A model generated the notes under the pieces. It was not told the origin of the DNA. It was given only the letters and a program-made list of their open reading frames with translations, and did no database searches. Shown here in pieces: positions 33,620 to 51,059 of a stretch of 64,000 bases of DNA. How positions within the stretch are numbered: position 1 is the first letter of the stretch; each line of letters opens with the position of its first letter. Made by a program: the position numbers and the translations under genes. The stretch spans positions 1 through 64,000 of the IMG/VR virus record IMGVR_UViG_3300023174_000040. The stretch is one strand, 5' to 3'.

Positions 33620-33636
33620 TTTCTTTTTGGTACGGT
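33620..33636 (+). promoter_or_regulatory. dispersed 17-bp motif, copy 1 (TTTC-Y5-GGTACGGT)
   Basis: TTTCTTTTTGGTACGGT; function unknown. Confidence 0.75.
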
Positions 33637-38889: not shown

Positions 38890-39012
38890 TGAATCACACT
38901 GCCTAGTCGGGGGACTGATTTTGGAAAGGATTTCCACCCCTGACATCTTTTTCATTTGCAAAGAATTTTCATTTGCACAGCCCCTCGGCTAGGCAGAAAT
39001 AAATCCCATAAG

Positions 39013-39029
39013 TTTCCCTCTGGTACGGT
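39013..39029 (+). promoter_or_regulatory. 17-bp motif, copy 3
   Basis: TTTCCCTCTGGTACGGT. Confidence 0.75.
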
Positions 39030-39063
39030 TGGTCAAGAATGGGGCAGAAATAAATCCCATAAG

Positions 39064-39080
39064 TTTCCCTCTGGTACGGT
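39064..39080 (+). promoter_or_regulatory. 17-bp motif, copy 4
   Basis: TTTCCCTCTGGTACGGT. Confidence 0.75.
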
Positions 39081-39133
39081 TGGTGACGACGGGTTCAAGG
39101 AATGGCCGACACTACAAATAAAAGGACAAAATA

Positions 39134-46185: not shown

Positions 46186-47004
46186 ATGGATGTAATGGTT
46201 GTTGACAATAAGGCTAATGTTGATATTGAGCCTGCAAGTAAATCTCAAACATACTACTTGTTCCTGCTCACTGGCTTGGATTCAAGAAATTGCAATCTAA
46301 GTAAAAAAGAATGTTTCGAATTGATTGCCTTATGGAAAGGCAATAAAAGAGAAGATCAAGAATTTGTTTATGATTTCTTGATTACAAAAAATGCGGTTGT
46401 TCGTCGTAAAAAGAGTTTTCCAAAAAATAACACAAAGAAGGGCGCTATTATGAATAAGTTTAGTCGTAAAGAAACTTACGAGAGAATTGACGGTCTTGTT
46501 AACGCAAAGAAGAGTTGGGATTATATTGTTAAGATCTTGAACAAAGAAGGTCATGCAACTAATCGAATTAGTGTTGGCAAATGGACCGTTAAAGGTTCGT
46601 ACGATTTTTATCGTAGAACTCAGCCTGAGCGTCCCACCGGAGTCAGAAAGGTTCAGCAGGAACGAAGGCTTGAAATGTGTGAACTGCTCAATAGCGGCAA
46701 GACAATCAAAGAAATTGCTGCCCAATTTAATATTTGCGATGTGGCTGTGCGTAGTGCGATTAAAACCGCCCTGCGTAAGAATGAAGCTGTCATAGACGCC
46801 AAATATAGTTTTGGTAAGAATGCAAAGCGGAGTAGGAGCAAGAACAAGAACAAGAAAGTTCTGACCCAGAAAACTGTTTTAAAGCCCAGTTTTCCCGCTT
46901 TTGCCATTTCAGAAATGAAGTCTGTATTGGATAGCATTCTTGATTCCAATATGGACAACAGTTCTAAACTGGCCATCATTAAAACTGTGTTGAGTCAAAA
47001 GTAA
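46186..47004 (+). CDS. multi-HTH DNA-binding protein (putative regulator)
   Basis: SGKTIKEIAAQFNICDVAVRSAI HTH; LNKEGH.T...G.W recombinase-type HTH; basic tail. Confidence 0.65.
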   Translation: MDVMVVDNKANVDIEPASKSQTYYLFLLTGLDSRNCNLSKKECFELIALWKGNKREDQEFVYDFLITKNAVVRRKKSFPKNNTKKGAIMNKFSRKETYERIDGLVNAKKSWDYIVKILNKEGHATNRISVGKWTVKGSYDFYRRTQPERPTGVRKVQQERRLEMCELLNSGKTIKEIAAQFNICDVAVRSAIKTALRKNEAVIDAKYSFGKNAKRSRSKNKNKKVLTQKTVLKPSFPAFAISEMKSVLDSILDSNMDNSSKLAIIKTVLSQK

Positions 47005-47006
47005 TA

Positions 47007-47138
47007 ATGGAATACCTAATTCTTATTGCCATTGTATTCTGTTTTATGCGTGGTGTTTTTGCCCCAGACACAAACTCGACTTCATATAAGTTGGGCAAAG
47101 GTCTGGGTCATAAGACTAGACTGGAACGGTTGAAGTGA
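47007..47138 (+). CDS. 43-aa membrane peptide (not in the ORF track)
   Basis: MEYLILIAIVFCFMRGVFAP...; starts 2 nt after the upstream stop. Confidence 0.6.
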   Translation: MEYLILIAIVFCFMRGVFAPDTNSTSYKLGKGLGHKTRLERLK

Positions 47139-47210
47139 GAACGATGCGATCTGCGGCTTGTCGGGCTCCCGATTTTGTAACCACAATCAGTTGGTGAAAG
47201 GAATACTATT

Positions 47211-47774
47211 ATGAACGATGAACCAGTTACACCTGTTCAGCAGAAGAAGGCCCGGCTGCCACCCAAGTTTAAGGATAATCACTACTACGTGATTCAACCT
47301 AATGGGCTTAATACCCAGGGAAAACCGCTGGGTAAAATACTTGGCTTATATAATGCTAACAACTATAGTTTTGAAGATAGTAATATTACATGGGATGAAG
47401 ATATAGTAACTGTACTCGGTGGCCCGTTTACTATTGAGTGGTACGAAGATCTTCTTCGTGGCATCAAAGACCACTTTCCCCAGGTGAACGTGCATGGGTT
47501 TTCACCTCCCGAGCCACACCGTCCAATCTATGCTGTTTACGCCACTTATGCGTCCGTTGCGGCTCATCTGCTGGGCTACTGCATCAGCAATTCTGATGAG
47601 GACATTAAGGCATATTACGATGAACAAAATGGCTATGGACTTGACATTCAAGTTGTAACTCCTATTGTGATACCCTCTGGTTATGCGACTCAAAAGAGCG
47701 AACTAGTTCGTCAACGAGAAGTGCTAAAAAAGCAAATTGAACTCATAGACAGAAAGATACAGGCAAAAACATGA
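47211..47774 (+). CDS. chimeric hypothetical protein with an MqnC/CofH-like segment and a C-terminal coiled coil
   Basis: SD GAAAGGA; segment IEWYEDLLRGIKDHFPQVNVHGFSPPE. Confidence 0.75.
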   Translation: MNDEPVTPVQQKKARLPPKFKDNHYYVIQPNGLNTQGKPLGKILGLYNANNYSFEDSNITWDEDIVTVLGGPFTIEWYEDLLRGIKDHFPQVNVHGFSPPEPHRPIYAVYATYASVAAHLLGYCISNSDEDIKAYYDEQNGYGLDIQVVTPIVIPSGYATQKSELVRQREVLKKQIELIDRKIQAKT

Positions 47775-47855
47775 GACAAGAATAGAAAAATAAACCTTAA
47801 TATCTGGGTACGTTGGTGGGATAGACTGGATAGAAAACACTGATTCTTGATCTTG

Positions 47856-47872
47856 TTTCTTTCCGGTACGGT
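47856..47872 (+). promoter_or_regulatory. 17-bp motif, copy 7
   Basis: TTTCTTTCCGGTACGGT. Confidence 0.75.
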
Positions 47873-47913
47873 TTGGTGTTGGTCCGTTAAAACACCTTCT
47901 TGCAAAGATATTT

Positions 47914-49188
47914 ATGATTTTAAATAAAATAAAAAAATTATCGGATCTTCTTAAAGATACATCTTCAAGTTTAGATAAAGTAAAAATATTAAAAACTCAT
48001 CTTGAAGATGATGATCTAAAAAAACTGGTGATGTATGTTTACAATCCGTATTACCAGTTTTATATTACAAGCAGTGTTTGCGAAAAGAATGGTTCACTGA
48101 AAGGAAAATCTTTCAATGACGTCTTTGAATTGCTTGATAATCTAAGAAAAAGAATTGTCACGGGACACGAAGCAATTGGCTGCGTGAATTCTTTTATTGA
48201 AAAAAATCCTGATCACAAGGATATTTTATTCAATATCTTGGACAAGGATCTTAAAACAAGAATAGCAGAAAAAACTATCAATAAGGCAATTCCTGGACTC
48301 ATCCCTGAGTTTGAAGTTGCTCTTGCTGAAAAGCATGAAAAAGATTTAGATTTTTCTTCTAGCGACTACTACGCCAGCAGGAAATTAGATGGATGCCGAT
48401 GTATTGTTGTTATTGATGAAAACGGCAATGCAACCTCCTATAGCAGGCAAGGTAAAATTTTCACCACGCTTTCTGTTCTTGAAAAAGAAGTTCAAAACTT
48501 GGGTCTTAAGAATGTCGTCCTAGATGGTGAAGTTTGTATCTTCAAGGATGGCATTGAAGACTTCCAAGGTATTATGAAATTAATTAGGAAAAAGGATTAT
48601 TCGATTCCTTTTCCTGTTTACAAAATATTTGATTTTCTTAGTGCAGAAGAATTTTATAATAAAAAAGGAAAGTTAAATCTCGAGGATAGATTATCTCTTC
48701 TTGAGAAGAATATCCCCAAAGATAATAAATTCCTTCATATATTGCATCAGGAAATCGTTAAAGATGATGACCACTTTAAAAAGCTATTGAAGGAAGCGGA
48801 TGATAGTAATTGGGAAGGCTTGATGCTTCGATTAAATTCAACATATAAAGGCAAAAGAACAAAAGAGCTATTAAAATGCAAGACATTCTTTGATGCTGAG
48901 TACGTTGTAAAGGATGTTGAATTTGGACCTATTCATCAAGTTGTTGACGGAAAAGAGATAGAAGAAGTAATGCTGAGTTGTGTTACTATAGAACACAAGG
49001 GGTTTCCTGTTAGGGTAGGCAGCGGATGGAACGTAGAAGAAAGAAGAGAGTATTATAAAAATCCTAAAAAGATTATCGGCAAAACAATCACTGTAAAGTA
49101 TTTCGCAGAATCTACCAATCAAGATGGTGGGCTTAGTTTGAGGTTTCCTGTTTTTAAGTGTCTATACGACGGAGAACGAGATGTCTGA
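47914..49188 (+). CDS. ATP-dependent DNA ligase
   Basis: KLDGCR, LDGE, YKIFD, EGLMLR, LLKCK, GSG and LRFPVF motifs. Confidence 0.95.
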   Translation: MILNKIKKLSDLLKDTSSSLDKVKILKTHLEDDDLKKLVMYVYNPYYQFYITSSVCEKNGSLKGKSFNDVFELLDNLRKRIVTGHEAIGCVNSFIEKNPDHKDILFNILDKDLKTRIAEKTINKAIPGLIPEFEVALAEKHEKDLDFSSSDYYASRKLDGCRCIVVIDENGNATSYSRQGKIFTTLSVLEKEVQNLGLKNVVLDGEVCIFKDGIEDFQGIMKLIRKKDYSIPFPVYKIFDFLSAEEFYNKKGKLNLEDRLSLLEKNIPKDNKFLHILHQEIVKDDDHFKKLLKEADDSNWEGLMLRLNSTYKGKRTKELLKCKTFFDAEYVVKDVEFGPIHQVVDGKEIEEVMLSCVTIEHKGFPVRVGSGWNVEERREYYKNPKKIIGKTITVKYFAESTNQDGGLSLRFPVFKCLYDGERDV

Positions 49189-50138: not shown

Positions 50139-50146
50139 TTATATAT
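50139..50146 (-). promoter_or_regulatory. putative late promoter ATATATAA, 3 nt before the kinase ATG
   Basis: CAT-ATATAATGT-ATG on the - strand. Confidence 0.55.
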
Positions 50147-51059
50147 GAACATTAGATACGGAATTTGTTGTATTATTCTCTCGTTAGAGGAAAATGATCC
50201 TCCAAAGAAATTTCAAAGAATGACTTATAAAAAGTTTAGTCAAACTCCAAGAGAAGAGGCCGTGACTGAACTTAGCAAAAGAATACTCAATAATATTGAT
50301 GTTACATTCAATGCTATAAAGTATTGTAAAGAACGTAATTTTAATTATAGGCTAAGTAGCGACTTATTTTCATTGATAACGTATGATAAGGCCGATTTAT
50401 CGCTAGAGCAATTGCCGGATTATGATAAAATAATTGATCTTTTCAAGCAGATAAAAGAATATAATGCTGTGAACAGTGTTAGGATAAGCCTGCACCCTGA
50501 TCAATTCAATGTCCTTGCCAGCAAAGATGAAAATGCTTTATCAAGAACTATTAAGGAATTAAATTTTTATAGCTGGGTTATGGATCAAATTGGATGCTCT
50601 GCTGATTATAACTCCCCTATAAACCTTCATATAAATAACAATCAGGATAGTTGTGAGGAGATAATCGATAGGCTATCTGCTAGTTTAGATATATTGGATG
50701 ACAATTGCAGGTCTAGGATAGTTTTTGAGAATGACGATAAAACAAAGTGTTGGAGTGTAAAAAAACTATCTGGATTTTATTATAAAAAATTTAATTCGCC
50801 AATTACTTTCGACTTTCTCCATCACAAATGCCACCCGGACGGATTATCGGAGAAAGAGGCGTTCGAACTCTGCTGTCACTCTTGGGGCAGTTTTAAGCCC
50901 CTGTTCCACTACAGTGAGTCTCGGGATGAAAAGAATCCAAGAGCACACGCAGACTATCCTTCAAATATTCCCAGCTTTTACGACAGCGAAATTGACATAG
51001 ATTTTGAGTTTAAGAAAAAAGAAAAAGCTATTGAAAAATTCATTACTCTAAACCATTAG
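50145..51059 (+). CDS. uvsE: UV-damage endonuclease
   Basis: YRLSSDLF, SLHPDQFNVLAS, FENDD, TFDFLHH, PLFHYSES, AHADY. Confidence 0.92.
   Translation: MNIRYGICCIILSLEENDPPKKFQRMTYKKFSQTPREEAVTELSKRILNNIDVTFNAIKYCKERNFNYRLSSDLFSLITYDKADLSLEQLPDYDKIIDLFKQIKEYNAVNSVRISLHPDQFNVLASKDENALSRTIKELNFYSWVMDQIGCSADYNSPINLHINNNQDSCEEIIDRLSASLDILDDNCRSRIVFENDDKTKCWSVKKLSGFYYKKFNSPITFDFLHHKCHPDGLSEKEAFELCCHSWGSFKPLFHYSESRDEKNPRAHADYPSNIPSFYDSEIDIDFEFKKKEKAIEKFITLNH

What the first reader, a model, noticed from the sequence alone, without database searches (positions are those of the whole stretch)
47433..47513. 27-codon fragment of a host radical-SAM menaquinone enzyme embedded in frame in a phage ORF
IEWYEDLLRGIKDHFPQVNVHGFSPPE closely resembles, from memory, the internal segment of MqnC/CofH-family enzymes that follows the QGG-x-HP motif. 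The flanks are unrelated to MqnC and lack the CxxxCxxC motif. The 81 bp are 41/81 GC, versus 17/60 in the nearby upstream 47341-47400, though downstream DNA is also GC-richer. This suggests capture of a short piece of host gene. Possible roles: decoy epitope, antisense-like target, recombination scar or att-like core. Its 5' edge contains TGGTACG, the core of the dispersed motif, which may be coincidence.
Basis: partly seen in the sequence, partly recalled or inferred. Interest (0 to 1): 0.8.

Follow-up and report, generated by a model that had tools for sequence, protein, structure and literature searches.

The report
Host mqnC snippet inserted in phage gene
A 323-kb lake phage carries a 75-base in-frame insertion, in the linker of one small gene, that is letter-for-letter identical to part of the menaquinone gene mqnC of a co-occurring Planctomycetota bacterium; it looks like a recent recombination scar, and its main value is that it points to the phage's likely host.

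Summary
The ORF at 47211-47774 (187 aa) contains a 26-codon tract, 47436-47513, that matches MqnC (TIGR03699, E 1.9e-6). The tract is 78/78 nt identical to the full-length mqnC of a 69%-GC Planctomycetota population, found on three metagenome contigs and in the same sequencing runs as the phage.

The similarity stops sharply at both ends, and no other MqnC sequence occurs anywhere in the window. Independent assemblies from three samples support both junctions, so this is not an assembly chimera. A closely related phage strain in a fourth sample lacks exactly 47436-47510 (75 nt), and a 3-nt GAG fits either side of that joint.

The insert lies at the boundary between two unrelated phage modules. 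The N-module (aa 1-76) resembles small phage proteins. The C-module (aa 102-187) belongs to a family of stand-alone proteins of about 85 aa.

The phage copy matches one specific host allele, whereas host relatives 4% diverged differ from it by 1-2 nt. The direction is therefore most likely host to phage, and recent.

Best reading: a microhomology-mediated capture of host DNA that is tolerated in a linker. It is not an enzyme, and nothing supports a role as an att site or antisense device. The TGGTACG overlap with the dispersed motif is coincidental. One point remains unexplained: the captured tract coincides with the lowest-GC3 stretch of the host gene.

The parts
47211..47774 (+). Chimeric phage ORF of 187 aa: N-module, then the mqnC-derived insert, then the C-module. 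It has no Pfam or PHROG family.
   Evidence: Both modules have conserved homologues elsewhere, so this is real coding sequence.
47211..47438 (+). N-module, aa 1-76. It is homologous to the C-terminal half of small phage hypothetical proteins of 116-125 aa, which end ...GPFTIEELVEFKPIT.
   Evidence: about 40% identity, E 1e-11 to 1e-13. The AF2 model has low confidence here.
47436..47513 (+). The 78-nt tract identical to codons 121-146 (1-based) of host Planctomycetota mqnC, read in the same frame as in the host. It encodes EWYEDLLRGIKDHFPQVNVHGFSPPE.
   Evidence: 78/78 nt to L168, L169 and L171. A host contig in run X7 shows 0 differences. Sharp boundaries are shown.
47436..47510 (+). The 75 nt (25 codons) absent from the related phage strain in run X7. 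This is the inserted DNA; it could equally be placed at 47439-47513 because GAG occurs at both ends.
   Evidence: joint 47435->47511, 'skips 75', with 3 letters fitting both sides. Removing it leaves the frame intact, reading ...GPFTIE|PHRPIYAVYA....
47511..47513 (+). The GAG microhomology, also present at 47436-47438. It is shared by the phage empty site and by the host sequence at the junction.
47514..47771 (+). C-module, aa 102-187. It belongs to a family of stand-alone proteins of about 85 aa, which also occur fused to various unrelated N-termini. The predicted fold is strand-strand-helix-strand plus a long C-terminal helix.
   Evidence: 59 cluster representatives with E<=1e-3; P0024 is 70% identical over its full length. 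AF2 pLDDT is 92-98.

Best explanation
This is a recent insertion of 75 bp of host chromosomal DNA into a phage gene by illegitimate, microhomology-mediated recombination.

Proposed sequence of events:
1. The phage, a 323-kb, 34%-GC jumbo phage (IMG/VR UViG_3300023174_000040), infected a 69%-GC freshwater Planctomycetota bacterium related to MAG REEB432.
2. During infection, a piece of the host's mqnC coding sequence was joined into phage DNA at a GAG trinucleotide. This happened either as filler DNA at a repaired break or by a template switch during replication.
3. The piece landed exactly at the joint between the two modules of a small accessory ORF.
4. Its length is a multiple of three and it reads without stops, so the ORF stayed open. 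The protein gained 25 residues of MqnC, one helix plus one strand-forming segment of the TIM barrel, as an extended linker.

The insert cannot have MqnC activity. It is most likely neutral or merely tolerated.

Shown directly: the identity to the host gene, the boundaries, the empty-site allele, the position at the module boundary, and the presence of the insert in several independent samples.

Inferred: the direction of transfer (host to phage), the recombination mechanism, neutrality, and that the donor is the host in which the phage replicates.
For: 1. Identity and boundaries. The tract is 78/78 nt identical to full-length host mqnC on three high-GC contigs from different metagenomes. Identity drops to random level immediately outside 47436-47513.

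2. Empty site. Run X7 contains a near-identical phage contig that skips 47436-47510, with GAG fitting both sides. The same run contains the host gene with the tract in its native flanks, QGGMHPTLPL on the left and IHAFTKVSKR on the right.

3. Not a chimera. Independently built contigs support the insert-bearing junctions in X1, X2 and X4, which come from different samples and studies.

4. Direction. Host relatives 4.2-4.5% diverged elsewhere in mqnC carry the same tract with 1-2 differences. The phage copy equals the L168 allele exactly, including the CTT at row 126 of the codon table, a state found in none of the other sequences compared.

5. Position. C-module homologues start M-x-x-R-P-IYAVYA, and N-module homologues end shortly after GPFTIE. 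The insert therefore sits in the inter-module linker. AF2 models it as an isolated helix plus coil between the modules.

6. No enzyme. There is no CxxxCxxC motif and no other MqnC similarity in any frame of the 64-kb window. The score is 27 bits against a cut-off of 428.

7. Dispensability. The X7 strain also has an 8-nt deletion 20 nt upstream that truncates the ORF.

8. Co-occurrence. Host mqnC is found in runs X7, X8 and X3 (sample S2), and its right flank appears in X1 and X2.
Against: The captured tract coincides with the lowest-GC3 stretch of the host gene: 15/26 GC3 codons against 88% gene-wide. Only 0.3-0.6% of 78-nt windows in the host contigs have GC this low. Random capture does not predict this.

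The 35-point GC gap between phage and donor is large. phiKZ in Pseudomonas shows a comparable gap, but that comparison rests on my own knowledge.

The empty-site allele could in principle be a secondary deletion. That strain shows several other indels.

One low-depth contig in X2 joins the phage left flank, the tract and the host right flank. It could be a real recombinant rather than an assembly-graph artefact.

Neutrality is assumed, not tested. There are no expression data.
Confidence: 0.75

Rival explanations
1. Functional co-option. The 25 MqnC residues are retained because they do something for the phage, for example mimicking a surface element of MqnC to bind a partner of the futalosine pathway, or acting as a useful spacer between the two modules.
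For: The insert is in frame, in the native reading frame and orientation, and free of stops. The insert-bearing allele occurs in at least three samples released between 2018 and 2025. AF2 gives the helix 75-88 moderate confidence.
Against: Three of the six possible frames of the insert are open, so the native frame is no surprise. There have been zero substitutions since capture, so there has been no time for selection to show. Outside its TIM barrel, the strand-forming part is modelled as coil. A related strain lacks the insert and even truncates the ORF. No other viral contig in IMG/VR encodes this peptide.
Confidence: 0.1
2. Homology patch or att-like core. The 78-bp identity serves for, or results from, recombination of the phage genome with the host chromosome at mqnC, either by integration or by repeated exchange. 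Repeated exchange would also homogenise the tract and could explain its intermediate base composition.
For: The perfect 78-bp identity is long enough for RecA-type recombination (established knowledge). The tract is compositionally odd in both genomes: 52.6% GC against 34% in the phage and 69% in the host (GC3). One X2 contig reads phage-left, tract, host-right.
Against: The tract lies inside an ORF, not next to a recombinase. No integrase was found between 42 and 52.6 kb. Integration would split an essential-pathway gene at about codon 121. Host and phage contigs are each contiguous across the tract in X7 and X1. The hybrid contig has a depth of about 3.8 and can be explained by graph simplification at a shared repeat. 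The host clade carried the tract before its strains diverged.
Confidence: 0.06
3. Reverse direction. The tract evolved or ameliorated in an AT-rich phage and was then copied into the host mqnC, so the host gene is the recipient.
For: In the host the tract has 11 AT-ending codons where about 3 are expected (P about 3e-4). Nine of its 11 differences from the nearest genome relative are GC-to-AT in the host, against 31 of 113 outside the tract (Fisher p 6e-4).
Against: Three host lineages that are 4-4.5% diverged share the tract with vertical-looking differences, and the phage matches only one of them. Many of the AT-ending codons also occur singly in more distant relatives. A near-identical phage strain lacks the tract. 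Converting the host gene would need flanking homology, which the phage does not have.
Confidence: 0.06
4. Assembly chimera or chance similarity.
For: The phage and the donor occur in the same samples, which is the setting in which chimeras form.
Against: Both junctions were recovered by a different assembler in three samples. The patch is internal, with phage sequence on both sides. A 78/78 nt match and E 1.7e-8 in a 5.8-billion-protein search exclude chance.
Confidence: 0.02

Closest known systems
MqnC, cyclic dehypoxanthinyl futalosine synthase (radical SAM, TIGR03699; Pfam PF04055 + PF19288)
   Same: 26 consecutive codons are identical in DNA to a Planctomycetota mqnC. They correspond to profile positions 102-131, the helix-strand unit that follows the QGG-x-HP motif.
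   Different: Only about 7% of the enzyme is present. There is no CxxxCxxC cluster motif, no CofH_C domain and no barrel, and the rest of the ORF is unrelated phage sequence.
Host DNA picked up by phages through illegitimate recombination, as in aberrant excision or lambda Spi- transducing phages studied in E. coli (PMC3375238, PMC11372144), and filler or templated insertions at repaired breaks
   Same: There are sharp non-homologous junctions, a 3-nt microhomology, donor DNA from the infected cell, and a polymorphic empty site.
   Different: The piece is very short (75 bp) and internal to a gene, and it is kept in frame as part of a protein. Classical cases move kilobases next to an attachment site. 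The mechanism here is inferred, not observed.
Phage-host exact sequence matches used for host prediction (att cores, tRNA fragments, transferred genes)
   Same: A perfect 78-nt match between a phage and a bacterial chromosome, with co-occurrence in the same samples.
   Different: It is not at a tRNA or an intergenic att site, no integrase is adjacent, and it lies in a coding linker.
Auxiliary metabolic genes (AMGs) of phages
   Same: The sequence is derived from host metabolism.
   Different: It is not a complete or catalytically competent gene. No full-length viral mqnC carrying this motif exists in IMG/VR.

Membership tests
MqnC/CofH radical-SAM enzyme | CxxxCxxC [4Fe-4S]/SAM motif near the N-terminus | tested here: not met
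   The motif is absent from the 187-aa ORF. It is present in the host gene as CSAVCDFC.
MqnC/CofH radical-SAM enzyme | Full-length match reaching the family's curated score | tested here: not met
   27 bits against a cut-off of 428.1, covering 30 of 342 profile positions. There is no Pfam hit.
MqnC/CofH radical-SAM enzyme | C-terminal CofH_C domain (PF19288) | tested here: not met
   The C-terminal 86 aa belong to an unrelated viral small-protein family.
Host-derived insertion by illegitimate recombination | Nucleotide-level identity to a donor gene, with abrupt loss of similarity at both ends | tested here: met
   78/78 nt identity, with the flanks at random level.
Host-derived insertion by illegitimate recombination | An empty-site allele in a close relative | tested here: met
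   An X7 contig skips 47436-47510 and has only 2 SNPs across the laid region. It could not be re-read as sequence, and no copy was found in IMG/VR.
Host-derived insertion by illegitimate recombination | Short microhomology at the junction | tested here: met
   GAG occurs at both ends, and 3 letters fit either side of the joint.
Host-derived insertion by illegitimate recombination | Junctions present in real molecules, not only in one assembly | tested here: met
   Logan contigs of X1, X2 and X4 cover the junctions. Single raw reads were not inspected.
Phage attachment site (attP/attB core) | Identical core sequence in the phage and in the host chromosome | tested here: met
Phage attachment site (attP/attB core) | An adjacent integrase or recombinase | tested here: not met
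   None was found among the ORFs from 42 to 52.6 kb. The remaining 259 kb of the genome were not available.
Phage attachment site (attP/attB core) | Hybrid attL/attR junctions in lysogens | tested here: inconclusive
   One low-depth X2 contig reads phage-left, tract, host-right. It cannot be told apart from an assembly-graph artefact at a shared repeat.
Dispersed GGTACG motif of this phage (promoter-like) | The conserved flanks, GTTTCYTTYY before and GTT after the GGTACG core, located upstream of a + strand gene | tested here: not met
   The site at 47440 shares only the hexamer, which is the host's W-Y-E codons. Eight true sites have both flanks.

The most novel reading that the evidence does not exclude
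The 78-bp tract may be an active interface between phage and host genomes rather than a dead scar. On this reading, phage and host exchange or recombine through it repeatedly. That would explain why the tract has an intermediate base composition that is anomalous in both genomes, and why a contig joining phage-left, tract and host-right exists. It would imply that a jumbo phage can recombine with, or integrate into, the mqnC gene of a Planctomycetota host.
Probability: 0.06. Interest if true: 0.75.

Novelty: new member of a known kind. Interest (0 to 1): 0.4.

Why it matters
First, the match gives a direct, sequence-level link between an uncultivated 323-kb freshwater jumbo phage (34% GC) and a specific high-GC Planctomycetota population. 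Few phages are known for this phylum. The 35-point GC gap would also be a useful caution for composition-based host prediction.

Second, it is an unusually clean natural snapshot of how phage proteins gain new sequence. Donor, recipient, empty site, microhomology and domain context are all visible, and no substitutions have accumulated since the event.

It does not reveal a new system or a new enzyme.

Tried and rejected
- Frameshifted or degraded continuation of mqnC around the tract. tblastn of 20 MqnC proteins against all six frames of the window, plus tblastx and blastn of 47000-47900 against 82 Planctomycetota loci, found nothing outside 47436-47513.
- A decayed full-length AMG. Rejected for the same reason and because of the empty-site allele.
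- Orthologues in related phages. Eighty loci sharing the neighbouring ligase at about 50% identity lack any part of the ORF. The upstream gene has no relative in IMG/VR. The INPHARED phage collection has no match.
- The empty-site junction as an exact pattern in IMG/VR: no hit.
- Any other viral contig encoding the MqnC peptide pattern: only this phage.
- GC content as evidence of foreign origin. It is not diagnostic, because 44 regions of the window reach the same GC.
- TGGTACG as a mechanistic link to the dispersed motif. Rejected, because only the hexamer is shared and it is present in the host gene itself.
- Function from structure. AF2 followed by Foldseek against the PDB gave nothing below E 1e-3, with a weak PaaB-like hit for the C-module. 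The Atlas search returned only viral hypothetical proteins.
It was replaced by an alignment-based scan.
- Transfer from phage to host. This was considered seriously because of the GC3 anomaly, but it is disfavoured by the comparison across the host clade.

Full report
**What is in the sequence**

The window is the first 64 kb of IMG/VR contig UViG_3300023174_000040, which is 323,267 bp long; window and contig coordinates coincide. The window has 35.6% GC.

The finding lies in a 187-aa ORF at 47211-47774 on the + strand.

**Is the MqnC resemblance real?**

Yes.
- NCBIfam TIGR03699 (MqnC) matches aa 73-102 at E 1.9e-6, on profile positions 102-131 of 342. CofH-family models score lower. Pfam finds nothing.
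- In a search of 5.8 billion proteins, the 20 best hits are all radical-SAM/CofH_C proteins, 79-89% identical over only 27-30 residues.
- The alignment shows the similarity confined to EWYEDLLRGIKDHFPQVNVHGFSPPE. The CxxxCxxC motif and everything else of MqnC are missing from the ORF.
- tblastn of 20 MqnC proteins against all six frames of the whole window finds no other piece.

**The donor**

A scan of species-representative genomes returned 554 confirmed matches. All 80 that were kept are Planctomycetota. The best nucleotide identity among them was only 68/81, to L094, MAG REEB432.

An exact 41-mer of the tract then retrieved three metagenome contigs from different JGI samples, L168, L169 and L171. 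They have 69% GC and match the phage over exactly 47436-47513, 78 of 78 nt, and nowhere else. Each carries a full-length mqnC of 384 aa, with the cluster motif CSAVCDFC. In close relatives the gene sits next to a VitK2_biosynth gene. This mqnC is 89.3% identical, ungapped, to that of REEB432.

**Chimera or real, and is it polymorphic?**

Contigs built by a different assembler (Logan) from four runs of four samples and studies were laid on 46600-48400.

- In X1, X2 and X4, contigs cover the phage-to-tract junctions. An assembly chimera is therefore excluded.
- In X7, a 1931-nt contig of a closely related phage strain (2 SNPs) skips 47436-47510. That is 75 nt, and three letters (GAG) fit either side of the joint.
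- The same run holds a 597-nt host contig with the tract at 0 differences. It is flanked by DNA encoding QGGMHPTLPL on the left and IHAFTKVSKR on the right.
- The host right flank is also seen in X1 and X2.

Removing the 75 nt leaves the ORF in frame, reading ...GPFTIE|PHRPIYAVYA.... The inserted DNA is therefore 25 codons.

**Where the insert landed**

- Residues 1-76 are about 40% identical to the C-terminal half of small phage proteins of 116-125 aa that end ...GPFTIEELVEFKPIT.
- Residues 102-187 belong to a family with 59 cluster representatives. Most are stand-alone proteins of about 85 aa that begin M-x-x-R-P-IYAVYA. Some are fused to assorted unrelated N-termini. P0024 is 70% identical over its full length.
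- No protein in the databases combines both modules.

The insert therefore sits precisely at the inter-module joint, four residues before the first strand of the C-module. AF2 models the C-module with pLDDT 92-98 (strand-strand-helix-strand plus a long helix), the insert as a helix (75-88) plus coil at pLDDT 66-77, and the N-module poorly. Fold and feature searches suggest no function, and there is no PHROG match.

**Direction of transfer**

This had to be examined, because the tract is compositionally odd in the host as well.
- Its GC3 is 15/26, against 88% for the whole gene. It is the lowest-GC3 window of the entire gene.
- Only 0.3-0.6% of 78-nt windows in the host contigs have GC this low.
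- Nine of its 11 differences from REEB432 are GC-to-AT in the host, against 31 of 113 outside the tract (Fisher p 6e-4).

This raised the possibility of transfer from phage to host. Two host relatives argue against it. They are 95.5-95.8% identical to the host mqnC outside the tract and carry the same AT-rich tract with 1-2 differences. Relatives at about 90% identity carry a GC-rich version.

The AT-rich allele is therefore older than the split of these host strains. The phage copy equals one specific host allele, including the CTT at row 126 of the codon table, which none of the other compared sequences has. Host-to-phage transfer, recently and with zero substitutions since, is the parsimonious reading.

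Why the captured piece coincides with the least GC-rich stretch of the gene remains unexplained. Possible reasons are a bias in capture, better tolerance of such DNA in an AT-rich phage, or chance.

**Mechanism**

The mechanism is inferred, not observed. The features are sharp non-homologous ends, a 3-nt microhomology, a short donor piece and a clean empty site. Together these are the signature of illegitimate recombination: either filler DNA joined in at a repaired break, or a template switch onto host DNA and back. Illegitimate recombination that picks up host DNA is well studied for lambda in E. coli (PMC3375238, PMC11372144).

The insertion would have survived because it preserves the frame and lies in a linker. 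Three of the six possible frames of the insert are open, so the native frame is not remarkable.

In the X7 strain the ORF is additionally truncated by an 8-nt deletion 20 nt upstream. This suggests the gene is dispensable and that the spot is prone to indels.

**Alternatives**

- An att-like role lacks support. No integrase is present between 42 and 52.6 kb, there are no tRNAs, and the tract lies inside an ORF. The single hybrid contig in X2 has low depth and can be explained by graph simplification at a shared repeat.
- An antisense role has no evidence. The tract is in sense orientation within an ORF.
- A functional peptide cannot be excluded, but nothing calls for one.

**The TGGTACG overlap**

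The window has eight copies of a roughly 19-nt motif, GTTTCYTTYY-GGTACG-GTT. All are on the + strand and upstream of + strand genes. The site in the tract shares only the hexamer. That hexamer comes from the host's own W-Y-E codons and is present in every mqnC compared. The overlap is a coincidence.

**Host inference**

The donor is certain. That the donor is the host in which the phage replicates is likely, because phage and donor DNA must have met inside one cell, and the two co-occur in at least four of the five phage-positive samples. It is not proven. The host is far more widespread than the phage, and the GC gap is large.

**Novelty**

No other contig in IMG/VR encodes this peptide pattern. 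The kind of event, host DNA captured by illegitimate recombination and a phage-host exact match, is known. This is a particularly clean and informative instance, not a new system.

Noticed in passing
window, GGTACG cores at 33629, 38882, 39022, 39073, 43005, 45298, 47865, 52627 (+ strand): A dispersed motif of about 19 nt, GTTTCYTTYY-GGTACG-GTT, occurs only on the + strand and 16-81 nt upstream of + strand ORF starts, including the ligase gene at 47914. It looks like a phage promoter or regulatory site. TGGTACG occurs 8 times where 2.4 are expected.
   Followed up: partly
window 38992-39094: Two copies of the motif, at 39022 and 39073, sit in a direct repeat of about 51 nt. The 30 nt shown before the core and the first 5 after it are identical in both copies.
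   Followed up: no
window 46836, 47127-47165, 47409-47417, 47822/47823 (run X7 strain): The related phage strain in X7 differs from the window by many indels but only 2 SNPs over about 1.5 kb. The indels are a 12-nt deletion, a 39-nt skip just upstream of the ORF, an 8-nt frameshifting deletion inside the ORF, and 322 extra letters after 47822. This stretch seems prone to indels.
   Followed up: partly
L168:827-904 (host mqnC codons 121-146, 1-based): The host gene's own copy of the tract has an anomalously low GC3: 15/26 against 88% gene-wide. Host strains 4% diverged share this allele; relatives 10% diverged do not. The cause is unknown.
   Followed up: yes
run X2, contig 5 (window 47175-47513 plus 169 nt of host right flank): A low-depth contig joins the phage left flank, the tract and the host right flank. 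It is either an assembly-graph artefact at the shared 78-mer or a real phage-host recombinant.
   Followed up: no
window 47514-47771; P0024-P0081: The C-module is a widespread small viral protein of about 85 aa with conserved IYAVYA...LLGY...GYGL...IPxGYA motifs and a long C-terminal helix. It also occurs fused to many unrelated N-terminal domains, and its function is unknown. The fold shows a weak PaaB-like resemblance only.
   Followed up: partly
window 47914-49188 and 50145-51059: An ATP-dependent DNA ligase (PHROG 114) and a UvdE-type UV endonuclease lie just downstream of the ORF, forming a small DNA-repair neighbourhood. About 400 IMG/VR contigs carry ligases roughly 50% identical to this one.
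   Followed up: partly
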